Below are positions 7,256-45,359 of a stretch of 64,000 bases of DNA, piece after piece. The DNA lies in IMG/VR virus record IMGVR_UViG_3300024336_000005, positions 124,001 through 188,000 of that record; one strand, written 5' to 3'. The translations under genes were made by a program, and so were the position numbers. Positions within the stretch are counted from its first letter, which is position 1. Every line of letters starts with the position of its first letter. Under the pieces are notes generated by a model. It had not been told where the DNA came from, searched no databases, and saw nothing but the letters and a program-made list of their open reading frames with translations.

Positions 7256-7264
7256 GAAGACATA

Positions 7265-7355: not shown

Positions 7356-7472
7356 GTCCTTTGCTTGGCAAGCCAAGGCTAGGACTGGATCATTGGGCGG
7401 AGGCTTAACCTTACCAAAGGGCACCAAAAATATATAGGTGTGGTTGCTAATGATTAGCGACCGTAAGGTTAA

Positions 7473-7547
7473 TGCGGAATAGAGAAGCCAGGTTATCTCG
7501 CTAGCCTCATAAGCTGGAGATCGCAGGTTCAAATCCTGCTTCCGCTA
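7473..7547 (+). tRNA. tRNA-Met(CAT), initiator-like
   Basis: T1/T72 mismatch, A11-T24, TTCAAAT T-loop, loop CTCATAA. Confidence 0.88.
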
Positions 7548-7549
7548 CA

Positions 7550-7620
7550 TTCCCAAGATAAGAAAATCAAATGCAATCGCGGTTAACTTTTGTAGTTTTT
7601 GCTTAGGCTTATCTTGGGAA
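7550..7620 (+). repeat. 13 bp perfect inverted repeat right after tRNA-Met
   Basis: TTCCCAAGATAAG 7550-7562 / CTTATCTTGGGAA 7608-7620. Confidence 0.7.
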
Positions 7621-7630
7621 CATTTTCTTA

Positions 7631-7699
7631 CTCCTAGAGAGGAGGAGAAAGACTGTCCTGCGCTCCTCTTCCACTACGTGGTCGCGGATGCTCGGAGTC
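7631..7699 (+). ncRNA. repeated structured RNA motif, copy 4
   Basis: CTCCT-AGAG-AGGAG-GAGA; GACT..CC-TGCGC-TCC...GGA-TGCTC-GG-AGTC. Confidence 0.55.
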
Positions 7700-7701
7700 A
7701 G

Positions 7702-7796
7702 TTGCTTGTTAACACAGGTTTACCTCAGGCTACGGAGCTTGCTCAATGCTTGAGCTTCGCCCCTAGGCCTCCAGGTAAACCACAGTAAACAAGCAA
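7702..7796 (+). ncRNA. long irregular hairpin
   Basis: 7702-7710/7788-7796, 7717-7725/7773-7781, apical GCTCAA/TTGAGC. Confidence 0.5.
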
Positions 7797-7823
7797 GCGA
7801 CCTAAGGCTTGCCTTGGGGTCGG

Positions 7824-7897
7824 GCCCGCTTAGCTTAATGGATTAAAGCGACGGTCTACGAAGCCGTTAAATCTAGGTTCGAATCCTAGAGTGGGTG
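7824..7897 (+). tRNA. tRNA-Arg(ACG)
   Basis: ACGGT-CTACGAA-GCCGT; CTAGG/CCTAG T-arm. Confidence 0.9.
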
Positions 7898-7907
7898 CAT
7901 AGTCTAA

Positions 7908-7975
7908 CTCTCAGAAGAGAGGAGACGTACATAACGACAGCCCCTGCGCTCAACTACGTTGATGCTCATGTCTGT
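7908..7975 (+). ncRNA. repeated structured RNA motif, copy 5
   Basis: CTCTC-AGAA-GAGAG-GAGA; TGCGC-[TCAAC/GTTGA]-TGCTC. Confidence 0.55.
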
Positions 7976-8041
7976 CTGTCGGATTCCCCAAGGGTAACCC
8001 GACGATCATATAGACTTATGAACTTCGGTCTATGGGTTTAT

Positions 8042-8121
8042 GCCAGCGTGGCTCAGTGGCGACAGCACCGATCTTGTAAGTCGGTATCTCAACATCGTAG
8101 GTTCGATTCCTACCGCTGGCA
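8042..8121 (+). tRNA. tRNA-Thr(TGT) with a 12 nt variable loop
   Basis: GCCAGCG/CGCTGGC acceptor, CCGAT-CTTGTAA-GTCGG. Confidence 0.88.
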
Positions 8122-28839: not shown

Positions 28840-29793
28840 ATGCCCGATTCATACACCGGTGTGTACGTCCTCTATGTTGATGAGACCCTAATCGATAGGG
28901 TCTTTTCTGAACGATCCCTTTCCGTTGAGGAACTCTTAGACGGAACGTTGAGTGAAGATGCTTGCAAGGAGTTGAATGTTCCAGTTCAAAATACTTCTTG
29001 GACTGAGTATCCAAATACAAACTTTGTTCTAAAGTCTGTCTTCAGACCTAAGAAGTCCGCTCTTGTGAGACTGTCAAAGGATTGCAAGAGAGTTGAAGTC
29101 CTTTGGGACTACAACAAGACTCCACTGCAAGGCTTGAAGCCACGCAACAAGGAGCAGAACATGCTCCTCAATGCTTTGATGGATGATGAGATTGCATGTG
29201 TCGTTGTAGAAGGCAAGGCAGGAAGTGGGAAGACGCTCTGTGCTCTTGCCGTTGCCTTGGATTGCATTGGATCGCCCAGCTCCCCTTATAAGAAGATTGT
29301 TCTTACGAGACCAATGTCCTCTGTGGGAGCTCCTTTGGGAGCTCTACCTGGAGATCAAGCGGAGAAGTTCCTTCCTTATCTTGGGAACTACTTCTCGAAC
29401 TTTGAGTTCCTGTTAGGGAAGCATGGTCTTGCCTATCTTAAGACCATGATGGAGAAGGGGGACATTGAGATTCTGCCATTGCAACTAATTGGTGGCATCT
29501 CATGGCATGATACACTCGTGATTGCCGATGAGGTGCAGTCCTTGAATGCACAACAGATGTATGCACTGGGCACACGCCCTGCTGCAAACTCTAAGTTGAT
29601 TCTTCTTGGTGACAGCGCCCAGAGATATGGTAGGTTCGAGGATGCTAGACACACAGGGCTTTGGAAGATTGCCCACAGTGAGCATGCTCTTCGCTCGCCT
29701 TTGGTGAGCTACATTAAGCTTCTCAAGCAGGAGAGACACCCGCTTGCTGATGTCTTCTATAATACATTCGTTAATAATGAGGTTGTTGAATGA
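28840..29793 (+). CDS. phoH: PhoH-family ATPase
   Basis: PRNKEQ, GKAGSGKT, IADEVQ, LGDSAQ. Confidence 0.9.
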   Translation: MPDSYTGVYVLYVDETLIDRVFSERSLSVEELLDGTLSEDACKELNVPVQNTSWTEYPNTNFVLKSVFRPKKSALVRLSKDCKRVEVLWDYNKTPLQGLKPRNKEQNMLLNALMDDEIACVVVEGKAGSGKTLCALAVALDCIGSPSSPYKKIVLTRPMSSVGAPLGALPGDQAEKFLPYLGNYFSNFEFLLGKHGLAYLKTMMEKGDIEILPLQLIGGISWHDTLVIADEVQSLNAQQMYALGTRPAANSKLILLGDSAQRYGRFEDARHTGLWKIAHSEHALRSPLVSYIKLLKQERHPLADVFYNTFVNNEVVE

Positions 29794-30284
29794 GAGTAAG
29801 TATTTATAACAAGGGCGTTTCCTACAACGGGGAGACAGTTAAGTCTCCCCTTCCCAAGGAGAGCACCACAGAGGCGGCGGCAGTAGATGTTTCTACTCCC
29901 GTCCCCTTTGTTCTTGAGGTTGGTGCTAAGCATCTGGTTGACACAGGCTTGATTATCAAGGCTCCTCGAGGGTATTGCATCCAGGTCCTACCTCGTAGCG
30001 GACTGGCTTGCAAGAAGGGGATTACCATCCCTAACGCTCCTGGTCTAATTGATAGAGACTACTGTGGCCCAGATGATGTGATCAAGATCATGCTTGTGAA
30101 TCAGGGGAAGGAGGCTGTGGAGTTTAAGGCGGGAGATAGGGTGGCGCAGCTGCTCTTCACGCCGTACATCACGGTTTCGTGGGATGAGGAAGAGAAGGCC
30201 ACCTTTGCTAAGGTAACCTCCAGAGGAGGTTTTGGTAGCACTGGCGTAGATAGGAAGAGTGGACTTTGGAACAGAAGAACCTAG
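29790..30284 (+). CDS. dut: dUTPase (trimeric)
   Basis: AAVDV, PRSGLA, GLIDRDY, RVAQL, RGGFGSTG. Confidence 0.95.
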   Translation: MRVSIYNKGVSYNGETVKSPLPKESTTEAAAVDVSTPVPFVLEVGAKHLVDTGLIIKAPRGYCIQVLPRSGLACKKGITIPNAPGLIDRDYCGPDDVIKIMLVNQGKEAVEFKAGDRVAQLLFTPYITVSWDEEEKATFAKVTSRGGFGSTGVDRKSGLWNRRT

Positions 30285-30651: not shown

Positions 30652-30815
30652 CTGATCTCCCTCCAGCCTAGATCCTCTCCACCCACCTGTGGACCCGCCC
30701 GCAACCTCAAAGGCCAGCAGGGCCTTCAGTCCCAGTAAAGCTCTTCCAAATTGGGAAGATAATCATTACCACTCCTTTATTAGTTATGTTAAGCAATAAC
30801 AGCAGGAGCTCCTCC

Positions 30816-31211
30816 ATGAGTAGATGTAACAAGTGTGATATGCCTATCAATGGCACAATGATGGATAGATGCTTCTGTGAGCCAGCTGTTGGTAAGTCTA
30901 GTATGGCCAAATATATGCCCACATGTGGGGCAGACTATGACGATGATCGTCGTGATATGGCTCCCATCTATACCATGCCTCCCGTGGTAAAGAACATAGA
31001 CCCTCTTTGGGCTCACTTAGTGGTGAATGAGACCAACATAAGGTTTGAATACCTTTCTCCTAGTCGTGGGGCAACCACCAGGAGCGTTAAGCTTCTGGGA
31101 TGTTATAAGAGCTTTGGTAATACATATATAATTGGCTACTGCATGCTAAGAGATGCAAAGAGGACCTTTAGGGTCGATAGAATTCAGAAGGTGGTGGCCG
31201 TTGACGCTTAA
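30816..31211 (+). CDS. WYL-domain protein with an N-terminal Cys module
   Basis: IRFEY..TRSV..YIIGYCMLRDAKRTFRVDRI. Confidence 0.8.
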   Translation: MSRCNKCDMPINGTMMDRCFCEPAVGKSSMAKYMPTCGADYDDDRRDMAPIYTMPPVVKNIDPLWAHLVVNETNIRFEYLSPSRGATTRSVKLLGCYKSFGNTYIIGYCMLRDAKRTFRVDRIQKVVAVDA

Positions 31212-31479
31212 GAAAAGATTTGAAGCCCTTGGTGCTGTTCATTTAGGGATGTTTACTAAAGCAGAGTCCGCTGAACTGTATGCCTATGATGAGAACTGGT
31301 GGGTTTTTTCTCCCTCTTATCACAGCTATTACTCCAAGCCCTTTGAGCTGGAGCCACTTGGTGCGAGGATGAATCTTACCTGGGATCCAGGTGATGCTAA
31401 GAATCCTGGCGTCAAAAGAATGGTGGAAATTGTAGAGGCTTGGCTTACGGCCAATCCTCGTCCCAGAGGTGAAGAATGA
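31201..31479 (+). CDS. hypothetical protein
   Basis: Overlapping ORF. Confidence 0.5.
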   Translation: MTLKKRFEALGAVHLGMFTKAESAELYAYDENWWVFSPSYHSYYSKPFELEPLGARMNLTWDPGDAKNPGVKRMVEIVEAWLTANPRPRGEE

Positions 31480-32153
31480 GATGCAACAAATGTAGCATGC
31501 CCTTGAAGGGCTTTGGTATTGATCAGTGTTTCTGTGAGCCAGAGGCTATCAAGTCCAAAAAGTGGACAGTAGTTCATGAAGAAGTTAATGCTTCAGGCAT
31601 TGATCTAAAGACTGAGGTTTTTGGATCTCTTCTAGAGCAGCGTAAAGGAGAGTACGTGACTAAAGCATTGATTGTCTTTGAGGGGCAAGACTTTGTAAAG
31701 ACTGTGCGTAAGAATAGGCGTGAATATGATGCTCGGTTTATTATCCAAGAGATTCCCGGCCACGGCTGGAAGATTCGTAAGAATACGCTGACAGAACACC
31801 ATGGAGAAATGGAAAGTCTAGAGCCAATATTTGAAGTCTATCTAGAGGACGTGGAATTCTATCATGAAGAGGCAGGGGAACTATCTTTCTTTGGCCTCTG
31901 GGATTCTGGAACCGAGAGGTTCCATTCAGATATTAATGAGCATCTGCTTGATGCTCCGGTTAAGCCTAGCATTGTATCTCCTCAAGAGGTGAAGCGGATA
32001 GAGGCATGGGCTAAAGTGAAGAATCGCAAGAAGCCTTTTGCTCCTATCGTTATGAATAGTACGGCTGTTTCTTTTGACGATATGGTCTGCACTCAGCCCA
32101 TGACGGGAAGTGTTTCTGGAAAGTGGCTCAAATGGAAGTATGTCGATGAGTAG
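31476..32153 (+). CDS. hypothetical protein with an N-terminal CxxC..CxC module
   Basis: MRCNKCSMP..DQCFCEP. Confidence 0.6.
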   Translation: MRCNKCSMPLKGFGIDQCFCEPEAIKSKKWTVVHEEVNASGIDLKTEVFGSLLEQRKGEYVTKALIVFEGQDFVKTVRKNRREYDARFIIQEIPGHGWKIRKNTLTEHHGEMESLEPIFEVYLEDVEFYHEEAGELSFFGLWDSGTERFHSDINEHLLDAPVKPSIVSPQEVKRIEAWAKVKNRKKPFAPIVMNSTAVSFDDMVCTQPMTGSVSGKWLKWKYVDE

Positions 32154-32592
32154 ACTTTCTTTAATCATTGGAGACTGGTCTAACGATGGCCATGGTAAGA
32201 CTGATACCGTTCTTGTGACCATGAATGTCAGTAGGGCTGAACTCCTTAAGGCTCATGAAAAGGGGCTGAAGCAGGTGCCCGCTTTCAAGGGTTCTTGCGA
32301 AAACTATGAGGAGTCTTATATTTCCTTAGGATTGGCTCACCAGCTTGTTAAAGCTGGTTTGGATCCAGAGGACTTTCTTACTGACCCTTGTTGTCGTTGG
32401 GATGAATCAACTAAAAGTTTAATTGAATGTTCTTGGGACCATCCTGAGAATGAAGAGCTTCTCTTTATAGATTCAGAAGGTTATGCCAAGTTGTATATGG
32501 AGATATGCAAATTAGGAGACCCTCTTATTGCCTACTCATTCAATAATAATAAGTCCGACGAGATTTGCATCGGCGGCTATGGAGTAACTTGA
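32110..32592 (+). CDS. hypothetical protein
   Basis: LIIGDWSNDGHGK. Confidence 0.6.
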   Translation: MFLESGSNGSMSMSRLSLIIGDWSNDGHGKTDTVLVTMNVSRAELLKAHEKGLKQVPAFKGSCENYEESYISLGLAHQLVKAGLDPEDFLTDPCCRWDESTKSLIECSWDHPENEELLFIDSEGYAKLYMEICKLGDPLIAYSFNNNKSDEICIGGYGVT

Positions 32593-32593
32593 G

Positions 32594-32650
32594 GTGAAGC
32601 AATACAAAGAGTTAGTACAAGATGTACTAGAGAATGGAACCAAGAGATGA
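32594..32650 (+). pseudogene. vestigial thyA 5' end (MKQYKELVQDVLENGTKR*)
   Basis: Matches the ThyA N-terminus; GGAG upstream; stop overlaps the HNH ATG. Confidence 0.75.
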
Positions 32651-33138
32651 AGTGGATTCCTGGGTTCGAGGATCGTTATGCAGTTTCGGCTAATGGTGAG
32701 ATCTGGTCATATGTAGGACACATCCCTAGAAAATTAAAGCCAGATCTTGTTAAAGGATATCATCGAGTCACATTGTTTGATTCAAACAAGCGAACTCGTA
32801 TGCCTGTCCATAGAATTGTCGCATTAACTTATATTTTGAATCCAGAAAACAGACCGCAAGTTAACCATATAGATGGCAACAAAATTAACAATGCTGCAAT
32901 AAATTTAGAGTGGATGACATCTAAAGAAAACTGCGCTCATGCTTTGGAAGAGGGTCTTTATAAAACTGCTGTTGGCGAACAATATAATAGATCGGATCTA
33001 ACTGACATGGAAGTATTACAAATACGATCTGTGTGGGAAGAGAATGCTCACACTCAAAAAGAACTCGCTAACATGTTTTCTACAACTAGGTCAAATATAA
33101 ATAATATTGTTAATAGATACACTTGGAAACATATATGA
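32647..33138 (+). CDS. free-standing HNH homing endonuclease (NUMOD4-HNH type)
   Basis: MKWIPGFE..YAVS..G; VHRIVA; VNHIDGNKINN..NLEW; AT-rich. Confidence 0.9.
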   Translation: MKWIPGFEDRYAVSANGEIWSYVGHIPRKLKPDLVKGYHRVTLFDSNKRTRMPVHRIVALTYILNPENRPQVNHIDGNKINNAAINLEWMTSKENCAHALEEGLYKTAVGEQYNRSDLTDMEVLQIRSVWEENAHTQKELANMFSTTRSNINNIVNRYTWKHI

Positions 33139-33956
33139 TTCAATATATAGAACTCCTTCAACAAGTTTTAAGCGAAGGAGAATACCATCAAGATCGTACT
33201 GGCACCGGCCGTTGCTCTATCTTTGGTGTCCAAAAGCGATATGATTTGAACAATGGAGCCACCTTTCCTCTGGTCACAATCCGCAAATCTTTCTTTGCTA
33301 GTGCGGTCAAAGAAATCCTTTGGATGCTTAGGGGTGAGCGCAATGTTAAAACTTTGGGAGCAGGGTTCTGGAACCCTTGGGCTCGAGAGGGTGGAGACAT
33401 TGGGCCCTTGTATGGACATCAACTAAGACATTGGCCGGATGGGACTGAGGGTGGGAACGATCAAATTGCTAACGTTCTAGAGTCTCTGCGACAAAACCCC
33501 AAATCGCGCCGCCACATCATAACAACGTTCAATCCCCTTGACGCTCCTAAAGGCGTCCTCTATCCGTGTCATGGGATAGTCATACAATTCTATCCCAGTG
33601 CAGATGGGCAATTCCTGGATCTTCACATGGTGCAGCGATCACAAGATTTGATTCTTGGGTATCCTGTGAATGTTGCTGAGTATGCTCTGCTTCTTATGAT
33701 TTTTGCTAATCGACTAGGCAGAAAAGCCAGAACCCTAATTCACACTATTTCCGACTGTCATCTTTACTCAAATCACATCGAGGGTGTTAAAGAGATGCTC
33801 TCTAGAGAGCCGCTGAAGCTCCCTAGAGTGACGATAGCTGATAAGCCTATGCCTTACCCTGGTTGTGCCAGGGACGGCTCTGTATTGGAGCCTGAGGATG
33901 TACAACTGATAGGATATGAACACCATGGAAGAATCAAGTTCCCCATTGCAGTCTGA
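33135..33956 (+). CDS. thyA: thymidylate synthase
   Basis: DRTGTG, EILW, YGHQ, LYPCH, QRSQD, HLYSNH. Confidence 0.96.
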   Translation: MIQYIELLQQVLSEGEYHQDRTGTGRCSIFGVQKRYDLNNGATFPLVTIRKSFFASAVKEILWMLRGERNVKTLGAGFWNPWAREGGDIGPLYGHQLRHWPDGTEGGNDQIANVLESLRQNPKSRRHIITTFNPLDAPKGVLYPCHGIVIQFYPSADGQFLDLHMVQRSQDLILGYPVNVAEYALLLMIFANRLGRKARTLIHTISDCHLYSNHIEGVKEMLSREPLKLPRVTIADKPMPYPGCARDGSVLEPEDVQLIGYEHHGRIKFPIAV

Positions 33957-34197
33957 TCCTGAGCTGGTCATAAACCTTGAAGAAGCCATTGATCAAATAA
34001 AGTCTGACCTTGTCAAGATACAAAAACGGATTAAAGATGAAGAAGAATTCTTTGGAGAGATGGATGATGATTGCCCCTTGTTCATTCTAGATGGAAGAAA
34101 AAGGGAGGCCTGGGATTATGGTGTTGATTACGGCTATATTATGGGCGTAGCTGCCGGCCTAAAGGTTGCCTTAACACAACTTAGGAGAGCAATATGA
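33916..34197 (+). CDS. hypothetical protein
   Basis: ORF in the run; start uncertain. Confidence 0.5.
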   Translation: MNTMEESSSPLQSDPELVINLEEAIDQIKSDLVKIQKRIKDEEEFFGEMDDDCPLFILDGRKREAWDYGVDYGYIMGVAAGLKVALTQLRRAI

Positions 34198-34577
34198 GCC
34201 TCTTGACAGTAACTAAGACAGTAGTCGATTGTTTCAACTGGGACACCTTTGTACGAGAAGCATATGGAAGACCATATTGTTTTCAGCAACAAGGTGGTTG
34301 CAAGATGCGAGGTACATATCACTTAGAGGTCCACGGAGAGAAGGGGTATGACCCCTATGGATGCAAAGGCCTTCCTTTAGAGCTGGATAACAACCTCTTT
34401 GGAGTGGCCCTTGAGGAATGGCTCAGGAGGGACCCCAAGGAGGCCCCACCATCTATAGACTTCCTTGAGACATGGTGGGAGAGAAACTTTTATCCCAGCA
34501 TTGAAGCTGTTGCAGAAGACCTGTGCCAGAGAGGGCTTCTTCCTGTTGGTGAATATATAATTATCATCGACTGGTAG
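34194..34577 (+). CDS. hypothetical protein
   Basis: ATGA coupling. Confidence 0.6.
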   Translation: MSLLTVTKTVVDCFNWDTFVREAYGRPYCFQQQGGCKMRGTYHLEVHGEKGYDPYGCKGLPLELDNNLFGVALEEWLRRDPKEAPPSIDFLETWWERNFYPSIEAVAEDLCQRGLLPVGEYIIIIDW

Positions 34578-34589
34578 TCCAAACAATAA

Positions 34590-34835
34590 GTGGAGAAAGA
34601 AATGAGTTGGAAAGAAAAGTTTACTCCTACATCTGATACGCTGACGCTTCATTTTGATTCAGTCAAAGAGGCGGAAGTATTTAAGACGTGGCTTTGTAAC
34701 TCGGGGGAGCAATTCTATGATGACTTTCGAGAAGTCATGCGTTCTGATGGGGAGCTCCCCAAAGATAGCTCTGAGTATGTAGAAATTAATTATCAAGACT
34801 TGCCTAACCATATCTTCTTTAAAGCGGAAGGCTAA
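34590..34835 (+). CDS. hypothetical protein
   Basis: Short ORF. Confidence 0.5.
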   Translation: MEKEMSWKEKFTPTSDTLTLHFDSVKEAEVFKTWLCNSGEQFYDDFREVMRSDGELPKDSSEYVEINYQDLPNHIFFKAEG

Positions 34836-34844
34836 GGAGAGACT

Positions 34845-35081
34845 ATGACAGTAGCACAATTGATCAGCCGTCTAAGAGACTTCCCTTTAGATGCAGATGT
34901 CTTAGTAGAAGCGAGGGATAGCGGAGAGCCCTACAATTTCAGCGTAGAAGAAGGGACTTGGTATGCGGAGATGACAGAACAACTTGGCGGTGAGCCAAAT
35001 GAATACTATGCTCGAACTGATGTTAAAAGATTCAAAGAGTATTCTACTAAGTTCTGTGTCAGCATTAGTCCGAGCTGGTAG
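34845..35081 (+). CDS. hypothetical protein
   Basis: RBS AAGGAG; MTVAQLISRL. Confidence 0.6.
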   Translation: MTVAQLISRLRDFPLDADVLVEARDSGEPYNFSVEEGTWYAEMTEQLGGEPNEYYARTDVKRFKEYSTKFCVSISPSW

Positions 35082-35786: not shown

Positions 35787-36178
35787 AGAACAATACAAAC
35801 TGCACCATAGGCATCCTAGAAGAGGATCAAAGCGTTAGCGTTATCTATTGCCACTGGGATGGCTATCTTGATGCGAACGGTGAGCGTCTCTGGAGGTTCT
35901 ACTATGAAGAAAGTCATATTAGAGACCTGCTTGAGGGAGGAGATATCACATCTCTTGGCGCTAGCCATAAGGTAAGCGTTTACTATCATAAGGACTTCCA
36001 AGAGCCACTTAAGGTTGCTCGTGTTTATGATACTTCTCTTGAGATGGTTGAGGCTGAGGGACGTAGGTTTAATTATCTCTATTGCATTCGCTCTGGCGAA
36101 TGGTTCTTTTCAATGTGGTCGTCTAATGAATGGAAGAATTTAAAAGATGCAAACTTCAAGACCTCTGGTCCATTATGA
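35783..36178 (+). CDS. hypothetical protein
   Basis: YCHWDGY motif. Confidence 0.65.
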   Translation: MKNNTNCTIGILEEDQSVSVIYCHWDGYLDANGERLWRFYYEESHIRDLLEGGDITSLGASHKVSVYYHKDFQEPLKVARVYDTSLEMVEAEGRRFNYLYCIRSGEWFFSMWSSNEWKNLKDANFKTSGPL

Positions 36179-36923
36179 TGGTCCCATTGAATGGATCAAT
36201 GAAGGCCGTGTGATTCTGTATGGAATCCACGGGTCTCATCTTTATGGGACAAATATTGAGACCTCTGATGAGGACTATAAGGGTATTGTTGTCCCTCCTA
36301 GAGTGTACCGCCAGGGCTTTTCTAAGACCTTTGAGCAGGTTATCCAAGAGGGATGTGAGCTTGAGTATGTCATTTATGATATCCGTAAGTTCTTTAAGCT
36401 TGGGGTTAAGTGTAACCCCAACATCTTAGAGCTTCTCTACTCTAAGTCCTTCTTGCACTCCACTGAGGGAGGAAGACTGCTGGCTGAGAACAGGGATGCG
36501 TTTCTTTCTCAGCGTGCAATCTCTTCATACAATGGATATGCTCTGTCTCAGTTGAAAAAGATGGAGACCTATAGGGCTGCCAATCCAGAGAGAGCTAGGT
36601 TGCGGGAGTTGTATGGATATGACACCAAGTTTGCCATGCATTTGATTCGACTGTTAAGGGTCTGCAACGAGATGTTGACAGAGGGAACCATTAACGTGTT
36701 CCGTAAGGATGCAGAGCAGCTGATAGAGATCAGGAGGGGTGGATGGTCCTTGGCTCGTGTTCATAAGGTGGTCCAAGACCTTGAGGCCAGGAACTCTGCA
36801 TTGGCGACTACAACGTCTCTGCCTAAGGAGCCAGACATCGACTTCTTAGAGTCTTTGATGTCTGATATAATTGAGATTACGGAGTGCTCGGTTGCCTCCA
36901 AGGATGAGATAAATGTTTTTTGA
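36147..36923 (+). CDS. Pol-beta-superfamily nucleotidyltransferase
   Basis: GSHLYG..SDEDYKG, NPNILELL, YDTKFAMHLIRLL. Confidence 0.85.
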   Translation: MQTSRPLVHYDGPIEWINEGRVILYGIHGSHLYGTNIETSDEDYKGIVVPPRVYRQGFSKTFEQVIQEGCELEYVIYDIRKFFKLGVKCNPNILELLYSKSFLHSTEGGRLLAENRDAFLSQRAISSYNGYALSQLKKMETYRAANPERARLRELYGYDTKFAMHLIRLLRVCNEMLTEGTINVFRKDAEQLIEIRRGGWSLARVHKVVQDLEARNSALATTTSLPKEPDIDFLESLMSDIIEITECSVASKDEINVF

Positions 36924-37443
36924 TGTAGTGGTCGCTTGCGACCAGGCTGGTGGTATTGCCAAGGATGGAAAAATCCCCTGGCATCTCCCCGAGGAGCTTC
37001 AGTGGTTTAAGAAGGTAACTTCTCACACTCAAGACCCTGACAAGCAGAATGCTGTAATCATGGGACGCAAGACTTGGGAGTCTTTGCCCGAGAGGGCAAG
37101 ACCTCTAAAGGGCAGAGTGAATGTGGTGCTTTCGAGGGATGAAAACTATGCGCCCGAAGGTGATGCTTGGGGAGCTCTCTCTTTTGAAGATGCACTGCAA
37201 GCCATGGATCATGGGGACTTTGGGTGTGTAGAGACTGTCTTTGTCATCGGTGGAGGGCAAGTATATAAAGAAGCATTTGACCACCCCAGCTGCCGCCTCA
37301 TCATCATGTCTGGGATTCCAGAGACTTTCGACTGTGACACCTTCATTCGTGTCCCAGACCGCTTTGAAACAGTAGAGACTAGGCCCCACCAAGGATTTAA
37401 GATCTGGTGGCTTACCCCTAAGGAACTAACACAGGATGATTGA
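36913..37443 (+). CDS. folA: dihydrofolate reductase
   Basis: IPWHLPEE, IMGRKTWES, RPLKGR, IGGG, CDTF. Confidence 0.95.
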   Translation: MFFDVVVACDQAGGIAKDGKIPWHLPEELQWFKKVTSHTQDPDKQNAVIMGRKTWESLPERARPLKGRVNVVLSRDENYAPEGDAWGALSFEDALQAMDHGDFGCVETVFVIGGGQVYKEAFDHPSCRLIIMSGIPETFDCDTFIRVPDRFETVETRPHQGFKIWWLTPKELTQDD

Positions 37444-39091: not shown

Positions 39092-40084
39092 ATGAAAGAC
39101 TTTGTACATCTTCACCTGCACACTAAGTTCAGCCTACAAGATGGTACCACTGAGCCTGAAGGGCTCATGAAAAAGTGTGCCGATCATGGGATGAAGTCCG
39201 TTGGAGTGACAGATCATGGGAATATGGCAGGGATGTGGGATTGTGCTAAGTACGCTAAGCAGTATGGCATTAATCTAATCCCTGGCAATGAATTCTATGT
39301 TGTTCCTGATGCACAAAAGAGCAGGGGGAATGATTGGCGGAAGGGGAAGTCCTCTCATCTTGGACTTCTTGCTTATAGTCAGACCGGTTGGGATAATCTG
39401 TTGAGGCTTACTGCGTTATCGAATCTTGAGGGATTCTATAACGAACCTCGGATAGACTATAGGATGCTCAGAGAGAACTCCGAAGGATTGTGGTGTATGT
39501 CTGGCTGCCTCGGCGGCTTCATAAATACAGCCATTAAGAATAATCAATCCCCAAGGTTTGCGGTAGATATGCTGCATAGTATCTTTGGAGATAGGCTATC
39601 TCTTGAGATACAGGTGAACCCAATACCTGACCAGCAGATTCTTAATGATGAAGTGATAGCAATTCATCATGCTACAAAGATTCCCCTCGTTGCTACCGTT
39701 GATGCTCACTACTTAGATAAGACTGATAGCCACAACCAGGACATCCTGTTTGCAATGCAGTTAGGGAAATCCCTAGAGGACCCAGAGAGGCTGAAGATGC
39801 CTCCAGAAGAGCACTCTGTTGAAACCCCAGAGGAAGCCATCAAGAGGTTCACAGATAAGTATGGGAACCTTGGATTGGAGGCTTGTCGGAGGACGGTAGA
39901 GATTGGAGACAACTCTCACTCAGAGATTACTTACCAAAGTAAGAGCTATAAAATTCCCACCCTTGATGTTGCAGCACAGCCAGACTTCCAAGAGTTTCTT
40001 AAATGGAAGACAGGCTGTGAATGTCACACCTCAGACAAAGGGGAGTGCTTAGTACATGGAAAAGCCTGTGGGCATAACCACTAG
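39092..40084 (+). CDS. dnaE: DnaE PHP domain encoded as a separate gene
   Basis: HLHLHTKFSLQDG, TDHGN, GNEFY, SGCLGG, VDAHY; stops after the PHP linker. Confidence 0.92.
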   Translation: MKDFVHLHLHTKFSLQDGTTEPEGLMKKCADHGMKSVGVTDHGNMAGMWDCAKYAKQYGINLIPGNEFYVVPDAQKSRGNDWRKGKSSHLGLLAYSQTGWDNLLRLTALSNLEGFYNEPRIDYRMLRENSEGLWCMSGCLGGFINTAIKNNQSPRFAVDMLHSIFGDRLSLEIQVNPIPDQQILNDEVIAIHHATKIPLVATVDAHYLDKTDSHNQDILFAMQLGKSLEDPERLKMPPEEHSVETPEEAIKRFTDKYGNLGLEACRRTVEIGDNSHSEITYQSKSYKIPTLDVAAQPDFQEFLKWKTGCECHTSDKGECLVHGKACGHNH

Positions 40085-40107
40085 AAATAAAACTATAGGA
40101 GATTAGC

Positions 40108-40401
40108 ATGTTAGAAGTTACCCCCGCACCTGGATTCGCCATGGTGACACTTGAGAAGGACGCACAGACAAAGTCTGGACTTTTTGTTGCAGGCACACAG
40201 GACGGCCTAAAGAGAGGTCGCGTAGAAGGCCTTGGCCCTGAGTTTGTCACAGACCATGGTGTTTCAATCGCCTTCCCAGCAGATGTTGGAGATGTCGTTC
40301 TATTTGACAAGGGAACTGAATTTTCAATCCCGGGGCAAGGAAGCTACTACTTCGTGTGGCGGAACAACACTGTTGGCAGGATCGTCGAGTCAGGAGAGTG
40401 A
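40108..40401 (+). CDS. groES: GroES-like co-chaperonin
   Basis: TKSGLFV..RGRVEGLGP..VGDVVLF. Confidence 0.75.
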   Translation: MLEVTPAPGFAMVTLEKDAQTKSGLFVAGTQDGLKRGRVEGLGPEFVTDHGVSIAFPADVGDVVLFDKGTEFSIPGQGSYYFVWRNNTVGRIVESGE

Positions 40402-40727
40402 CAGATTCACTTGGGAATGAATACAGAGTGGGAGATATACTCTTGTACGTCGCCGGGGGAGATCAGGCTCGGCCACAGATTGCCATGTTTGTTGAAGCTT
40501 ATATGAATGCAGATGGAGATCCTAAAAATAGGTTCCTTTTTGCGAACCGTAGAACGTGGAATCGAGATCAAAATAACGTGTCTGTCAGAACTATTGGACG
40601 GCCCTGGAGGGCCCGCTTGAAGCGGCTCTCTGATGTCCTTCCTCATGACAAGGCCCTCGAGGCAAGAGATTTCTTTGAGTATGCCCTGGAGCTAAAGGGA
40701 TACGAGCTTGGGCTGCCTCTTCTTTGA
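40398..40727 (+). CDS. hypothetical protein
   Basis: RBS AGGAG with GTG start. Confidence 0.55.
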   Translation: MTDSLGNEYRVGDILLYVAGGDQARPQIAMFVEAYMNADGDPKNRFLFANRRTWNRDQNNVSVRTIGRPWRARLKRLSDVLPHDKALEARDFFEYALELKGYELGLPLL

Positions 40728-40774
40728 GGTATGATGTCAGAATGGAGAGGTCTCAGAGAGAAGGAGAGGTTCAA

Positions 40775-41600
40775 ATGAAGAGTGATGATCAGAACTCCTA
40801 CCTTTTATTTTGGGCCCAGAAGGGGCTTAAGGCAAGAGGGCTCTGGGATGACCAGGTCTATAAGGATAGGGTAGATTACGAGTGGAAAGTTATCTCTCGT
40901 ATGGGGTTTGCAGGATACTATCTTGTAGTCGCTGACTACGTGGCTTGGGCCCGTAGTCAAAGAATCCCAGTGGGGCCTGGACGTGGTTCAGGTGCTGGCT
41001 CTTTGATTGCCTATGCTGTAGGCATAACGGATGTGGATCCCATTAAGTGGGGCCTAATGTTTGAGAGGTTCTTGAACCCAGGTAGAGTCTCCATGCCTGA
41101 CTTTGACATTGACTTTGGAAAGAGAGATCGACTCAAGGTTTTTGACTACCTGTCAGAGAAATACGGACATCAGAACGTTTGTCAGATTGGTACTATTGGC
41201 ACCATGAAGGCAAAGCTTGCGGTCAAAGATGTGGGGAGAACCCTTGGACTTGATCCCTCTGAGCTGGAAAGATTCTCTAGCTTAATTCCCGACGAAGAAA
41301 GAGGAGGACAGGGCGATCATGCTATCACCTTGAGCCTCCTCTTGGATCCTCCCAGGGAGCTTGTTAAGGCTCACGGAGAGGCTCTTGCAAAGTTCAGAAC
41401 TGCTTATGAATTCGACAAAGACTTTCATAGAGTTGTCAACCTTGCTGTAGAGCTGGAAGGAATCCCAAAGAGTTACGGGGTGCACGCAGCTGGAGTTGTC
41501 ATCGGAATTGATTCTCTATGGGGAGATATTCCTCTTAGGAAATCAAATGATGGAAGGCCTGTTAGTCAGTGGACTGACAAGCAGGTCGAAAAGATGGGGT
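40775..41600 (+). CDS. dnaE: DnaE polymerase core, exon 1
   Basis: RBS AAGGAGAGG; GPGRGSGAGS, FERFLNPGR, PDFDID, GVHAAG. Confidence 0.94.
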
Positions 41601-41742
41601 TAGCTTATTAGCCCCTGTATGGAGCAATCCGTACAGCAAACAAGGTGAACCCCAAAGCAAAGGGGGTGTGCTGCATCTGCAGCGCTAACAGGGGAACCTA
41701 AGTGAGCGAGTCTCATAAGGCAATCCTGTGCTAAGCTTTTGA

Positions 41743-41771
41743 TTGATTAGGTATTGCAAAATTGATATAAT
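41743..41771 (+). promoter_or_regulatory. sigma70-like promoter inside the intron
   Basis: TTGATT-N17-TATAAT, 27 nt before the HNH ATG. Confidence 0.65.
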
Positions 41772-41798
41772 AGGAGCTCAACAAACAGGAGCTGCGTT

Positions 41799-42335
41799 AT
41801 GCAAAAGTTAGAAGGATTTGAGAAGGTAGAATCTGAAGGAATTTTGGGAGAGTATTATATTCATCCAGACGGAAGGATCTACAGAGATTACGGACATAGA
41901 ATAAAATTTCTTTCCGAGAGGCCAAATGCTTATGGCTATAGTCGAATAAGCTTGCTTCATCAGGATGGACGTAGAGTGGATCGAATGATGCATCGATTAT
42001 TGATGTTAACATTTGTCCCAAATCCAGATAATAAGCCACAAGTCAATCATAAAGACGGAGATAAAAGCAACAATCAGCTTTCCAATTTGGAATGGGTTAC
42101 AGATCGAGAAAATAAGCTTCATTCACATAGAGTGCTTGGAGCCAAATCTAGTGACAAAAGTTGTTTCTTATTTTATTTTGGGGGCTTTGTTCAAAGGTTT
42201 CCAAACATCCAAGCTGCTTGTAACTATGCAGCTAAAAAATATGGGTGCTCCTCAAAGTCTTTATGTAAATATTACACATCTAATGGATGTGCAATTATTA
42301 CAGAAGAAAGTGCAACGACTATCCTAACGGAGTAG
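41799..42335 (+). CDS. intron-encoded HNH endonuclease
   Basis: MHRLL..VNHKDGDKSNN..NLEW; RBS AGGAG. Confidence 0.9.
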   Translation: MQKLEGFEKVESEGILGEYYIHPDGRIYRDYGHRIKFLSERPNAYGYSRISLLHQDGRRVDRMMHRLLMLTFVPNPDNKPQVNHKDGDKSNNQLSNLEWVTDRENKLHSHRVLGAKSSDKSCFLFYFGGFVQRFPNIQAACNYAAKKYGCSSKSLCKYYTSNGCAIITEESATTILTE

Positions 42336-42428
42336 GGGGGGTATTGCTCCTCTCGAAGCGCCTTGATCTCTGAATCAATACAGAGAATATGATATAGTCT
42401 GTGCCACTAGAAATAGTGGAATAACACG

Positions 42429-44149
42429 TTGTAAAGTTCGACTTTCTGGGACTCCGCACACTTGATGTAATTGAAGACGCCTGTCGTAGCATAGAGAAAA
42501 GAACTGGAGTGACTATTGATTGGGAACAGACTCCCGAGGATGATGGTCCTACATTCGATATGCTCAGCAGAGGAGACACCTTTGGTGTCTTCCAGCTGGA
42601 GGCATCTGGTATCTCTGGGTTTACCAAGGGATATAAGCCAAGGTCTATCGATGACATCTCAATCATCTCAGCTCTATACAGACCTGGTCCGCTGGATAAT
42701 GGGATGGTAGATGCCATTCTGTCTGTCCGCAAGGGGAAGAAGATTGAAGAGAGTCCTGTTGATGTCATTAAAGAAATCCTTAAGGATACGAATGGGGTTC
42801 TGACATATCAGGAACAAGTATTAGCAATATCAAGGGAGATGGCTGGGTTTACCCTGTCGGGTGCTGATCTATTGAGGCGCGCGATTGGCAAGAAGCTGCC
42901 CGAAGAGATGCAAGCGCAGGAGCAAAACTTTGTTGATGGCTCCGTAGAGAAGGGGTATCCAAAGCATCAAGCTTTGGAAGTATTTGAAATCATTAAGAAA
43001 TTCGCTGACTATTGTTTGTCATATGATACTAAGGTATTGACCGATAAGGGGCCTCTCTCAATTGGTCATATTGTAGAAAATCAGCTAGAGGTTTCTGTTT
43101 ATTCTATTGATGAGCATGGGCTTGTCTACTCTCAGCCGGTGGCTCAGTGGCATGACAGGGGCATAAGAGAAGTCTTTGAATACAAGCTTGAGGATGGCTC
43201 TGTCATCCGAGCGACCGAAGATCATAAGTTTATGACCGTCGATGGAGATATGCTTGCTATTGAAACAATCTTCCTGCAGAATAGGGATATGCTTGTCATT
43301 GAAACAGGCAAGATTCAAATAGGGGAGATTGAAATGAAGCCTTATAATAAACTAAATGACCTGGACAAACAACTTGTCCAACGACTGTACTATGAAGGAT
43401 TATCCTTTGAGGACATCTCAAAGGAAGCTGTGGTATCTCAACGTTCTGTTAGTCGTGTTTTGCAAGAGGCTAATATTAACACCAGAAGGAAAAACCGTTA
43501 TACCCTTAATGAAAGCTTCTTCTGTGGAGCATATGATCATTATGAATGTGCATATTTTTTAGGCCTACTGGCAGCAGATGGATGCGTTACTCATAAGGAT
43601 TACATCGCCCTCCAGCTTATTGATGAAGAACTTGTCTTATGGTTTCGCAAAGCGATCGAATACTCAGGAGAAGTTCGGCTTATCCTTGGCGAGGAGCGAA
43701 AGCCCCCTGGCCAAGATGCCTATAGGGTGAACTTTAGCTCTGCCATAATGTCAGAGGAACTTCGTTCATATGGAATCATTGCCGGAAGACATCTTCAAGC
43801 AATTCCGAAGTTAGAAGATTCAATTGTGCCTCATTTTATTCGAGGGTATTTTGATGGAGATGGATGTGTTTACTTAAGGCCAGAGGGTTCTGGTGGAGTT
43901 GTTCATATTGTAGCCTCCGAGGCGTTTTGCGAATCGCTTAAAGAATACTTTGGATTCGGAACAATTAGTTCACATCCCAGTGGTATGTATTATTGGAGGA
44001 TCTTTGCAAAAAAACATGTGAATGTTTTTTATGAAGCCCTATATGATTCTGATGGTTCAGAGACCCTGTGCCTTAATCGCAAAAAGCAACTAATGGAAGC
44101 CTTCCTACGGAGCTACAAGTATGAAAATTGTTGGAAAGCAAAGGATTGA
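42429..44149 (+). CDS. dnaE: DnaE exon 2 fused to IntN (43013-43333) and a LAGLIDADG endonuclease (43334-44149)
   Basis: KFDFLGL, GVFQLE, LYRPGP, LRRAIGKK, FADY|CLSYDT; FLGLLAADG, FIRGYFDGDG. Confidence 0.92.
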
Positions 44150-44225
44150 GGATCAATCAGTCTATGATATTGGAGTAGAAAAAGACCATAACTTTCTTCT
44201 TGCTGATGGACAGGTTGCTTCCAAT
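43013..44225 (+). mobile_element. DnaE intein, discontinuous between the endonuclease and IntC
   Basis: C1 at 43013; block B ATEDHKF; IntC 44121-44225 VYDI..DHNF..ASN|CFNKSH. Confidence 0.9.
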
Positions 44226-45359
44226 TGCTTTAACAAAAGCCATAGTGTGGCCTATTCAATGCTTTCATATAGAACAGCTTATCTTAAGTGTCACTATCCT
44301 TCTGACTTCTATGCTGCAGAGCTTACGAGCCACGAAGGGGAAGTCAAGAAGCTTCTCCCAGCAATGGCAGATGCTCGAGCACACCACATGAAGATCAAGA
44401 CTCCTGATATTAATCTTAGTGAGGAGTGCTTTACGGCGACCGCCAGACATGAAATAAGGTTTGGACTTGCTGGAATTAAGGGGCTTGGGACAAAGGCTCT
44501 TCAGTCTATTATGAATGAAAGAGCCAATGGGAGTTTTGAGTCTATCACTGGCTTATGCAAGAGGCTCTCCTCTTCTGAGATTAAGTCGAATAATCTCACA
44601 GCCTTAGCAAGGTCTGGTGCATTTTCCCAAATAGAAACTGGAATGAACACAGCAGAGCTTGCAGAGTATGCCGTTAACACAGCGATTGCTCTTCGTAGCT
44701 ATCATAAAGATGAGAAGAAAGGCCAGGTGTCTATCTTTTCTGTTATGACTGAAGCTCCAGAAAATGAGATTAATGTTCAGAGACCGTCAATTCATTTGGA
44801 TGATGGAGATGAACTGGAGCTAGAGAAGGAAGCCTTGGGCTTTTATATCTCAGGATCTCCTCTGGATAAGTACAATACTATTAAGGAAAGATCCCATATA
44901 GATGAAATTGAAAGCTTAGAAGTTGATGGCATTTGGGTATCAGTTCTTGCCAGGATAACAGAGCTTAAGATTAGAAATGGAAAGAGGGGAAGCTTTGCAA
45001 TACTACAGCTAGAAGATACTAGCGGCAGCATTGGAGCTAAGATTTGGTCTAACAATATGGCTGAAGCTCGTCCATACTTAGAAGAAGGTAAGAGTGTTGT
45101 TGTCAGAGGAAAGACAAACTCCTACAAAGGACTTGAAATTGTTGTGGATTCTATTGTAGACGCTGAATCAGAAGTGAAAAGACTTTTGAAGAGAGTGGTC
45201 ATTCATAGACTTGATTCCACGATTTTAAATACACTCTTGCAATTGCCTGCAGGAAATGTTCCTATAGATCTTGAGCTTTCAAATGGCCAGATCAAACAAC
45301 GACTTGGATTTTTTGAAATCCAACCCCACATGCTGAGGGAACTGAATGAGATGGACTGA
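44121..45359 (+). CDS. dnaE: IntC plus the DnaE C-terminal part (HhH, OB fold)
   Basis: MKIVGK..ASN|CFNKSHSVAY, IRFGLAGIKG, EKEALGFYISG; GGAG upstream. Confidence 0.92.
   Translation: MKIVGKQRIEDQSVYDIGVEKDHNFLLADGQVASNCFNKSHSVAYSMLSYRTAYLKCHYPSDFYAAELTSHEGEVKKLLPAMADARAHHMKIKTPDINLSEECFTATARHEIRFGLAGIKGLGTKALQSIMNERANGSFESITGLCKRLSSSEIKSNNLTALARSGAFSQIETGMNTAELAEYAVNTAIALRSYHKDEKKGQVSIFSVMTEAPENEINVQRPSIHLDDGDELELEKEALGFYISGSPLDKYNTIKERSHIDEIESLEVDGIWVSVLARITELKIRNGKRGSFAILQLEDTSGSIGAKIWSNNMAEARPYLEEGKSVVVRGKTNSYKGLEIVVDSIVDAESEVKRLLKRVVIHRLDSTILNTLLQLPAGNVPIDLELSNGQIKQRLGFFEIQPHMLRELNEMD

What the first reader, a model, noticed from the sequence alone, without database searches (positions are those of the whole stretch)
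32594..33956. Homing endonuclease that appears to have replaced the start of thyA, leaving a vestigial N-terminus
Seen: MKQYKELVQDVLENGTKR* (with RBS), then the HNH gene, then a full thyA beginning MIQYIELLQQVLSEG. The three are chained by ATGA overlaps and there are no intron core motifs. Inference: the HNH gene inserted about 18 codons into thyA while carrying a new, diverged thyA 5' end. This avoids splicing and probably destroys its own target site, while the old stub drives coupled translation.
Basis: partly seen in the sequence, partly recalled or inferred. Interest (0 to 1): 0.6.

Follow-up and report, generated by a model that had tools for sequence, protein, structure and literature searches.

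The report
Endonuclease-linked thyA swap leaving a stub
In a 204-kb marine phage, a selfish HNH endonuclease gene arrived with about four fifths of a foreign thymidylate synthase gene and overwrote the resident one, leaving the resident gene's first 18 codons as a stranded mini-ORF and its last ~58 codons fused to the newcomer.

Summary
An 18-codon ORF (32594-32650, GTG start) lies upstream of an I-HmuI-like HNH gene (32647-33138) and a complete thyA (33135-33956). The three are chained by two ATGA overlaps.

The stub is the in-situ 5' end of an older, resident thyA:
- It sits directly after "geneX", exactly where thyA starts in an HNH-less relative (L129).
- It matches 16 of 17 residues of the N-terminus of P0003, a ThyA from a related contig without HNH. 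It matches only 8 of 17 of the thyA downstream of it.

The present thyA is a chimera. Residues 216-273 are 95% identical to P0003, while residues 19-200 are about 50% identical and fall in a different ThyA clade. So about 1.1 kb (HNH plus thyA codons 1 to ~215) replaced resident codons 19 to ~250.

No intron signal was found here, although the same scan picks up a probable group I intron around a second HNH gene in dnaE. The closest HNH relative (52% identity) also overlaps the start of a thyA in an unrelated phage contig.

The best reading is intronless homing, or HEG-linked gene conversion, with one illegitimate left junction. It is a phage, 5'-end mirror image of the fungal mitochondrial "mORF gene hybrids". 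Cleavage specificity, self-immunity and translational coupling remain inferences.

The parts
32110..32592 (+). geneX, an unannotated 160-aa ORF (148 aa from ATG 32146). It is the resident gene that precedes thyA in this phage group.
   Evidence: There is no Pfam hit. A homologue (29% identity, E 5e-15) lies directly upstream of thyA in the HNH-less relative L129 at 4500-4997, and the two share the C-terminal motif ICIGGYG.
32581..32584 (+). Shine-Dalgarno-like GGAG, 9 nt upstream of the stub's GTG. It is the resident thyA ribosome-binding site.
   Evidence: Read from the sequence. Relatives have GGAGG or GAGGAG at the same position before their thyA start.
32594..32650 (+). Vestigial 5' end of the resident thyA: GTG start, 18 codons, then a TGA that overlaps the HNH start codon.
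   Evidence: Residues 2-18 match P0003 at 16/17, P0007 at 15/17 and P0012 at 14/17, but the window's own thyA at only 8/17. At the DNA level it is 41/54 identical to L018, 40/54 to L128 and 27/54 to the window's own thyA. Its BLOSUM62 score is 83, against 28 for the best chance match.
32647..33138 (+). Free-standing HNH homing-endonuclease gene of 163 aa, I-HmuI-like. GC is 0.36, against 0.46 for the window.
   Evidence: It matches Pfam HNH_3 and NUMOD4 and PDB 1U3E (I-HmuI) at E 6e-16 with the catalytic His and Asn aligned. It is absent from the relatives L128, L129 and the P0003 contig. The nearest relative, P0122 (52% identity), also overlaps a thyA start.
33135..33956 (+). Complete, chimeric thyA of 273 aa. 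An alternative TTG start lies at 33123.
   Evidence: It covers Pfam positions 2-266 of 266. It aligns end to end with solved ThyA structures, and the DRTGTG, RR, PCH, QRS-D, N and H-Y motifs are all present.
32647..33779 (+). The incoming tract: the HNH gene plus thyA codons 1 to about 215.
   Evidence: thyA residues 19-213 are only about 50% identical to P0003. In a tree of residues 19-200 the window groups with P0002, P0008 and P0011 (SH-aLRT 99), apart from the clade that holds P0003 (99).
33735..33780 (+). Right-hand crossover zone, in the conserved ...IHT..D.H.Y.NH.EGVKEM... coding stretch.
   Evidence: Sliding identity to P0003 rises from 8/20 (aa 191-210) to 18/20 (aa 211-230). The last dense run of mismatches ends at aa 201, and the last scattered one is at aa 215.
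33780..33956 (+). Resident-type 3' end of thyA, residues 216-273.
   Evidence: It is 95% identical to P0003 over 58 columns, and residues 214-273 match at 56/60 against 40-48/60 for every other ThyA. In the tree it is sister to P0003 (SH-aLRT 94).
33916..34197 (+). Downstream resident ORF of 93 aa that overlaps the thyA 3' end.
   Evidence: Seen in the ORF list. The relative L128 likewise has an 82-aa ORF that overlaps its thyA 3' end.

Best explanation
An ancestor of this phage carried a P0003-like thyA directly after geneX. During mixed infection with a phage that carried an I-HmuI-like HNH homing-endonuclease gene abutting its own, different thyA, the resident thyA was damaged or recombined and then repaired from that donor.

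On the right side, the exchange resolved by homologous recombination in the conserved stretch around codon 215. On the left side there was no homology upstream of the HNH gene, so the join was illegitimate, after resident codon 18 and right at the HNH start codon.

The outcome has four parts:
- An 18-codon resident stub that keeps the old ribosome-binding site and GTG start.
- The HNH gene.
- About 215 foreign thyA codons.
- About 58 resident thyA codons fused in frame to the foreign part, giving a complete and probably active enzyme.

The replacement itself and its junction positions are shown here. Three things are inferred: that the HNH enzyme caused the event by nicking or cutting the resident allele inside the replaced tract; that the chimera is therefore immune to it; and that HNH and thyA are now translated by coupling down the chain stub > HNH > thyA.
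For: 1. Position. In the HNH-less relative L129, a geneX homologue is followed within 4 nt by thyA. In the window, geneX is followed within 1 nt by the stub.

2. Identity of the stub. It matches 16/17 residues of the P0003 N-terminus and 8/17 of the downstream thyA. P0003 lies on a contig with the order WYL-92aa-251aa-thyA and no HNH gene. That contig comes from a metagenome that also holds this phage.

3. Chimera. ThyA residues 214-273 match P0003 at 56/60, while residues 19-213 are about 50% identical. The trees of the two parts are incongruent.

4. The HNH gene looks mobile and thyA-associated.
   - It is absent from L128, L129 and the P0003 contig.
   - Its GC content is low.
   - It is I-HmuI-like with its catalytic residues kept.
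   - Its nearest relative, P0122, overlaps the start of a thyA that is only 28% identical, in another phage contig. The two share the same C-terminal tail, and in both the thyA start is embedded in the 3' end of the HNH gene.

5. No intron. Rfam finds nothing at E <= 10 in 31500-35000. The same kind of scan does find Intron_gpI signals around the second HNH gene, in dnaE. At the thyA locus the HNH ORF fills the whole gap between the stub and thyA.

6. Precedent. Co-conversion of flanks from distant cleavage sites is established for free-standing phage HEGs (PMC2988022), and HEGs mark the boundaries of genetic exchange between phages (PMC10448857).
Against: - The DNA of the P0003 contig could not be read, so the junctions are mapped only at the protein level, and microhomology at the left junction cannot be assessed.
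- No close relative of the donor tract exists in the databases. The best match is 56-58% identity, to P0002, and the tract sits on a long branch. So co-transfer of the HNH gene and the foreign thyA part is inferred from their contiguity, not observed.
- The P0003 contig shows a 251-aa gene before thyA where the window has a 225-aa gene plus geneX. It is therefore not an exact parent.
- No endonuclease activity, target site or expression has been tested.
- The low-coverage runs laid on the region gave no HNH-less variant of this phage and no informative RNA.
Confidence: 0.8

Rival explanations
1. The donor element already had the architecture 'thyA stub - HNH - thyA 5' part'. It moves as a unit by ordinary homologous recombination on both sides, using the first 18 codons and the 3' end as homology arms. 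On this view the illegitimate join is old and did not happen in this lineage.
For: The stub keeps an intact start, frame and precise ATGA overlap. The fungal mORF hybrids propagate as 'endonuclease plus gene piece' units (PMC3630166).
Against: The only other thyA-adjacent relative of this HNH gene, in L098, has no stub upstream. None of 107 other thyA loci has a stub-like vestige within 2.5 kb upstream. The stub and the 3' end both match the same local allele, P0003, which fits a local origin.
Confidence: 0.12
2. The HNH gene lies in a group I intron, or the ribosome bypasses it, so that the stub is exon 1 and is joined to the downstream reading frame.
For: thyA is a classical host gene for group I introns with homing endonucleases (T4 td; PMC2988022). 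This phage probably does have such an intron in dnaE.
Against: No Intron_gpI hit was found at E <= 10 at the thyA locus. The HNH ORF overlaps both neighbours, leaving no non-coding RNA to form an intron core. The downstream thyA is complete from profile position 2 and has its own N-terminus, so a joined product would either duplicate or delete that helix. No joint was seen in the RNA run, although its coverage is too thin to count for much.
Confidence: 0.02
3. A tandem duplication of the thyA 5' end was followed by in-situ divergence, and the HNH gene inserted between the copies. No foreign thyA is involved.
For: The stub and the downstream N-terminus are recognisably homologous (8/17 residues).
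Against: Divergence in place cannot give about 50% identity to P0003 over residues 19-213 next to 95% over residues 216-273. Nor can it move the 5' part into another ThyA clade with SH-aLRT 99. The stub is only 18 codons long, yet the divergent tract runs for about 215 codons.
Confidence: 0.04
4. The stub is retained because it now has a function of its own, as a leader ORF. Its translation delivers ribosomes to the HNH start and, through the HNH ORF, to thyA. This would be an add-on to the best explanation, not an alternative to it.
For: The only good Shine-Dalgarno site in the chain precedes the stub. The HNH and thyA starts lack one and sit in ATGA overlaps. In L098 the thyA start is likewise buried, without a Shine-Dalgarno site, in the 3' end of the HNH gene.
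Against: Only one sequence lineage is available, so selection on the stub cannot be measured. The event may simply be too recent for the stub to have decayed. No expression data are informative.
Confidence: 0.4

Closest known systems
Intronless homing and marker exclusion by free-standing phage endonucleases (T4 SegF, SegG, MobE; reviewed in PMC2988022, PMC2790892)
   Same: The endonuclease gene is free-standing, lies beside a conserved nucleotide-metabolism gene and is sporadic among relatives. Its presence is accompanied by a converted tract of flanking host-gene sequence that may reach hundreds of bases from the endonuclease gene.
   Different: In those cases both flanks recombine homologously and no gene remnant is left. 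Here the left join is illegitimate, inside the host gene, and leaves an 18-codon translatable vestige. Activity has not been tested here.
Fungal mitochondrial mORF 'gene hybrids' (Allomyces macrogynus atp6; Glomus atp6, atp9, cox2 and nad3; PMC3630166)
   Same: An endonuclease ORF travels with a foreign piece of the host gene. That piece replaces the native piece in frame, and the native piece survives beside it as a duplicate vestige. The host gene stays whole without any splicing.
   Different: Those elements are in organelles, use LAGLIDADG or GIY-YIG enzymes, and replace the 3' end, so the native C-terminus is left downstream. Here the setting is a phage, the enzyme is an HNH, the 5' four fifths of the gene are replaced, and the native N-terminus is left upstream, still with its start signals.
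Genes-in-pieces made by HEG insertion (Aeromonas phage Aeh1 nrdA split by mobE; T4 genes 39/60 split by mobA; PMC2988022)
   Same: An HNH gene sits inside the coding region of an essential phage gene with no intron or intein.
   Different: In those cases the two halves are both needed and reassemble as separate polypeptides. Here the downstream gene is complete and the upstream piece is redundant.
I-HmuI / I-HmuII / I-BasI family of HNH nicking endonucleases (PDB 1U3E)
   Same: The domain make-up is the same (NUMOD4-type N-terminus, HNH_3 core, C-terminal helical DNA-binding tail), with an E-value of 6e-16 to 1U3E.
   Different: Those enzymes are encoded inside group I introns of DNA polymerase genes. 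This one is free-standing and thyA-associated.
thyA (td) group I introns with I-TevI or I-BmoI
   Same: The host gene is the same, and the logic is the same: target a conserved, essential gene.
   Different: Those enzymes are GIY-YIG endonucleases inside self-splicing introns placed mid-gene. No intron was detected here.

Membership tests
Thymidylate synthase ThyA (Pfam PF00303) | Full-length match to the family profile | tested here: met
   The match has E 8.5e-84 and covers profile positions 2-266 of 266. The protein also aligns end to end with solved ThyA structures.
Thymidylate synthase ThyA (Pfam PF00303) | Catalytic Cys in PCH, the DRTGTG Arg, the RR pair, the QRS-D motif, the pyrimidine-selecting Asn, and the H-Y motif | tested here: met
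   All of these are visible in the alignments. Enzyme activity was not tested.
I-HmuI-like HNH homing endonuclease | HNH_3 catalytic core with a conserved His general base and metal-binding Asn | tested here: met
   HNH_3 scores 25.8 bits against a cut-off of 24.8. In the alignment to 1U3E, the vnH...N...N residues are kept.
I-HmuI-like HNH homing endonuclease | NUMOD4-type N-terminal DNA-binding module | tested here: inconclusive
   NUMOD4 scores 22.9 bits, just under the 23.4 cut-off. However, residues 2-40 align to the I-HmuI N-terminus.
I-HmuI-like HNH homing endonuclease | Site-specific nicking or cleavage of the HEG-less allele | not testable with these tools
   This needs purified enzyme and P0003-type thyA DNA.
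Free-standing HEG (intronless homing) | Not embedded in an intron or intein | tested here: met
   There is no Rfam intron hit, while the dnaE locus serves as a positive control. The ORF overlaps both neighbours, and there is no intein signature.
Free-standing HEG (intronless homing) | Sporadic presence among otherwise syntenic relatives | tested here: met
   The gene is absent from L128, L129 and the P0003 contig, which share the dUTPase...thyA...DHFR-DHH-PHP neighbourhood.
Free-standing HEG (intronless homing) | A converted (mosaic) tract of flanking host sequence next to the HEG | tested here: met
   The segment identities and the incongruent trees show this.
Group I intron-encoded HEG | A ribozyme core flanking the ORF | tested here: not met
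   No Intron_gpI hit was found at E <= 10 in 31500-35000, and no non-coding space is available.
Genes-in-pieces (split host gene) | The two fragments are complementary and both are needed for a whole protein | tested here: not met
   The downstream gene covers the whole profile, and the stub duplicates residues 1-18.
Mitochondrial mORF gene hybrid | An endonuclease ORF, plus a foreign in-frame piece of the host gene, plus a retained native duplicate piece | tested here: met
   compared with the description in PMC3630166.
Mitochondrial mORF gene hybrid | Organellar setting, LAGLIDADG or GIY-YIG enzyme, replacement of the 3' end | tested here: not met
   This is a phage genome with an HNH enzyme and a 5' replacement. 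It works like these elements but is not a member of the class.

The most novel reading that the evidence does not exclude
This HNH lineage may be a specialised 'HEG plus cargo' element for thyA.

- It carries the start of thyA inside its own 3' end, as seen in both the window and L098.
- It invades by replacing the 5' bulk of the resident gene, without needing homology upstream.
- It leaves thyA with no ribosome-binding site of its own, so that the essential enzyme is made only by ribosomes that first translate the stub and the endonuclease ORF.

That would be an addiction-like coupling that protects the selfish gene from loss. It would also make this a phage counterpart of the mitochondrial mORF elements.
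Probability: 0.2. Interest if true: 0.75.

Novelty: new variant of a known kind. Interest (0 to 1): 0.55.

Why it matters
This locus preserves the scar of a homing-endonuclease-linked gene replacement in a phage. The old start of the gene is still in place, the old end is still fused on, and a close HNH-less allele occurs in the same water sample. Such scars are normally erased because both flanks recombine homologously.

It shows that a free-standing HEG can enter a genome with homology on only one side and still leave an essential gene whole. That widens the conditions under which HEGs, and the gene segments they drag along, can cross between distantly related phages.

It offers a ready experimental system:
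- The P0003-type allele is a candidate natural target.
- The chimera is a candidate immune allele.
- The stub > HNH > thyA chain is a test case for translational coupling that ties a host gene to a selfish one.

It also links phage 'intronless homing' to the mitochondrial mORF gene hybrids, as the same solution reached at opposite ends of a gene.

Tried and rejected
- **P0003 contig DNA.** The sample file is too large. Scans of metagenome contigs and viral contigs with P0003 returned only the window's own genome and relatives at 67% identity or less. The junctions therefore could not be mapped at the nucleotide level.
- **Cultured relatives.** The best phage ThyA is 44% identical, geneX has only weak hits, and the DNA search hit only the HNH cores of unrelated phages.
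- **Donor of the foreign tract.** Nothing is closer than 58% identity (P0002). The 71 nt upstream of thyA on its contig, L017, do not encode an HNH gene.
- **Reads.** Four partial or RNA runs, laid on 3,001 letters at 80% likeness, gave only low-coverage pieces identical to the window. There were no joints and no HNH-less variant, and the 'loose ends' in 32839-32893 belong to unrelated HNH genes. This is uninformative about splicing or expression.
- **Other HNH relatives.** P0123, P0126, P0127 and P0129 are not next to thyA, so the thyA association rests on two loci only.
- **Promoter and terminator scan.** Matches were at chance level.
- **Scan of 107 other thyA loci for stubs.** None was found. 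A first, unrestricted version of that script timed out.
- **Rejected readings.** Chance similarity, assembly artefact, intron or bypass, and in-situ divergence of a duplicate are all rejected (see the rival explanations).

Full report
**What is there.** The window is bases 124001-188000 of a 204,008-bp virus record judged complete. It is found repeatedly in seawater metagenomes.

At the finding's coordinates the sequence reads as follows:
- geneX (32110-32592) stops at TGA 32590-32592.
- One base later, GTG 32594 opens an 18-codon ORF that ends at TGA 32648-32650.
- ATG 32647 overlaps that stop as ATGA and opens a 163-aa ORF ending at 33138.
- ATG 33135 overlaps that stop, again as ATGA, and opens a 273-aa ORF ending at 33956.

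Pfam calls the middle ORF HNH_3 plus a near-threshold NUMOD4. It calls the last ORF a full-length thymidylate synthase, profile positions 2-266 of 266. The HNH protein matches the solved I-HmuI structure 1U3E at E 6e-16, with the catalytic His and Asn residues aligned. The ThyA aligns end to end with solved enzymes and keeps all the catalytic motifs.

**The stub is a real thyA N-terminus, sitting where thyA used to start.** A six-frame scan of the window with residues 2-18 of the ThyA protein P0003 scores the stub at 83. The genuine downstream N-terminus scores 32 and the best unrelated 17-mer scores 28.

Two syntenic relatives were recovered that have no HNH gene:
- L129, a 204,200-bp genome.
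- L128, a 147-kb contig.

Both share the neighbourhood RecA-PhoH-dUTPase ... thyA ... DHFR-DHH-PHP with the window. In L129 a geneX homologue, with the same C-terminal ICIGGYG motif, ends 4 nt before the thyA start. In the window geneX ends 1 nt before the stub. The strong Shine-Dalgarno site that precedes thyA in the relatives precedes the stub in the window. The GTG start is shared with the TARA relative L018. At the DNA level the stub is 41/54 identical to L018 and 40/54 to L128, but only 27/54 to the thyA that now follows it.

**The present thyA is a chimera.** The word search with the window's ThyA found P0003, a 309-aa ThyA on a 3,240-bp JGI contig with the gene order WYL-92aa-251aa-thyA and no HNH gene. 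The contig comes from a metagenome that also contains this phage.

| Region of the window's ThyA | Identity to P0003 | Comparison |
|---|---|---|
| Stub, residues 2-18 | 16/17 | window's own thyA N-terminus: 8/17 |
| Residues 19-100 | 49/80 | |
| Residues 101-213 | 49/113 | P0002: 66/111 |
| Residues 214-273 | 56/60 | all other ThyAs: 40-48/60 |

Sliding identity jumps from 8/20 to 18/20 between residues 191-210 and 211-230, which places the crossover at about 33735-33780.

Maximum-likelihood trees of the two parts disagree:
- With residues 19-200, the window groups with P0002, P0008 and P0011 (SH-aLRT 99), apart from the 26-row clade that holds P0003 (99). The window sits on a long branch there, so the exact sister is uncertain.
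- With residues 216-273, the window is sister to P0003 (94).

Hence about 1.13 kb (32647 to ~33779: the HNH gene plus ~215 thyA codons) replaced resident codons 19 to ~250. The resident first 18 codons and last ~58 codons remain.

**The HNH gene behaves like a mobile, thyA-associated element.**
- It is missing from the relatives.
- It has the lowest GC content in the region, 0.36 against 0.46.
- It has intact catalytic residues.
- Its nearest database relative, P0122 (52% identity), lies on a Logan contig (L098) directly upstream of a thyA that is only 28% identical to the window's, and overlaps it.

In both loci the HNH protein ends with the same 12 residues, and the DNA of the last 13 codons is 37/39 identical. 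In both, the thyA start is embedded in that tail: ATG in L098, and TTG 33123 followed by ATG 33135 in the window. Other HNH relatives share the tail motif but are not next to thyA, so the association rests on two loci. L098 has no stub. None of 107 other thyA loci fetched here has a stub-like vestige within 2.5 kb upstream.

**No intron.** An Rfam scan at E <= 10 over 31500-35000 gave no intron hit. The same kind of scan around a second HNH gene (41799-42335), which lies between pieces of the phage's dnaE, gave Intron_gpI hits at E 2e-4 and 0.096, so the method can see introns in this genome. At the thyA locus the HNH ORF overlaps both neighbours and leaves no room for a ribozyme core. The downstream thyA also needs no upstream exon. 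The laid runs, including one metatranscriptome, showed only thin, collinear pieces and no joints. That is too little to count as evidence either way.

**Mechanism.**
- *Shown:* the architecture, the resident identity of the stub and of the 3' end, the foreign nature of the middle, the sporadic presence of the HNH gene, and the absence of an intron signal.
- *Inferred from established knowledge of free-standing phage HEGs* (cleavage at a distance from the HEG, resection, repair from the HEG-bearing genome, co-conversion of flanks; PMC2988022, PMC2790892, PMC10448857): the HNH enzyme nicked or cut the resident thyA somewhere in the tract that was later replaced. Repair copied the HNH gene and the donor's thyA 5' part. 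The right end resolved in the conserved stretch near codon 215. The left end, lacking homology, was joined illegitimately at the HNH start.
- *Inferred from sequence only:* the chimera is immune, because the resident sequence from codon 19 to ~215 is gone. Also, translation of HNH and thyA depends on the stub's ribosome-binding site through the two ATGA overlaps, since neither gene has a good Shine-Dalgarno site of its own.

A minority alternative is that the stub-HNH-thyA unit pre-existed in the donor and moves by homology on both sides. The lack of other such loci argues against this but does not exclude it.

**Comparison with what is known.** The closest functional analogues are intronless homing by T4 Seg and Mob enzymes and the fungal mitochondrial mORF 'gene hybrids'. 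In the latter, an endonuclease ORF brings a foreign C-terminal piece of atp6, atp9, cox2 or nad3 and the native C-terminus is left behind as a duplicate (PMC3630166, which also cites the Allomyces atp6 case). The present locus is the mirror image in a phage: an HNH enzyme, replacement of the 5' four fifths, and a native N-terminus left upstream with its start signals intact. It is not a genes-in-pieces case such as Aeh1 nrdA/mobE, because the downstream gene is complete. I found no description of this arrangement in phages in four full-text searches. That is a limited search, not proof of absence.

**Verdict.** It is a new variant of a known kind of event, HEG-linked gene conversion, and it is unusually well preserved. 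Interest is moderate to good. Its main value is as a natural, testable record of one-sided HEG invasion, and of a possible translational tie between a selfish gene and an essential host gene.

**Limits.** The donor lineage is not in the databases. Only one sequence lineage of the chimera exists, so selection on the stub cannot be measured. No activity or expression was tested.

Noticed in passing
window 39092-45359: The phage's DNA polymerase III alpha (DnaE) is encoded in pieces: PHP domain 39092-40084, palm/NTPase 40724-41611, fingers 42509-44149, and HHH plus OB 44121-45359. Two small ORFs (40108-40401 and 40356-40727) lie between the PHP and palm pieces.
   Followed up: partly
window 41612-42508: A second HNH_3 gene (41799-42335, 178 aa) lies between the dnaE palm and fingers pieces. 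It has about 180 nt of non-coding DNA on each side and sub-threshold Rfam group I intron hits: 42071-42420 (27.6 bits, E 2e-4) and 41688-41782 (E 0.096). It is probably an HNH-bearing group I intron.
   Followed up: partly
window 42509-44149: The dnaE fingers piece also carries Intein_splicing, LAGLIDADG_3 and Sigma70_r4-like matches (residues ~184-480). This suggests an intein with a homing endonuclease in the same gene.
   Followed up: no
G000:C1:108307-112247 (outside the window): Three further HNH_3 matches lie on the minus strand within 4 kb of one another. The genome therefore holds at least five HNH-type genes.
   Followed up: no
window 1649-8121: Seven tRNA genes lie in a cluster at the left of the window.
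   Followed up: no
window 32110-33138: geneX and the HNH ORF are in the same reading frame. They are separated only by the geneX TGA stop (32590-32592) and 18 open codons, so read-through of that one stop would fuse them. This is probably coincidence, with a 1 in 3 chance of the frames matching.
   Followed up: no
window 33840-33890; proteins P0002-P0020: This marine phage ThyA group carries a conserved C-terminal insertion (PYPGC-[PA]-RDGSVLEPED) that is absent from solved ThyA structures. The group itself is strongly mosaic. For example, P0004 shares its middle part with P0003 but has a different N-terminus, and large variable inserts follow the PCH motif.
   Followed up: partly
L098:3310-3981: The thyA-adjacent HNH relative P0122 has an extra Cys-rich N-terminal extension of about 55 residues, which looks like a zinc finger, in place of the NUMOD4-type start.
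   Followed up: no
window 30786-31211, 36147-36923, 36913-37443: The neighbourhood holds a WYL-domain protein, an RlaP-family nucleotidyltransferase, and a DHFR that overlaps the end of the RlaP gene. dUTPase (29790-30284) lies upstream. Together these form a nucleotide-metabolism block.
   Followed up: no
window 31400-33963 (run X13): A 2025 seawater metatranscriptome holds short contigs identical to parts of geneX, the HNH gene and the thyA 3' end. They could be RNA or carried-over DNA, and there is too little to judge expression.
   Followed up: partly
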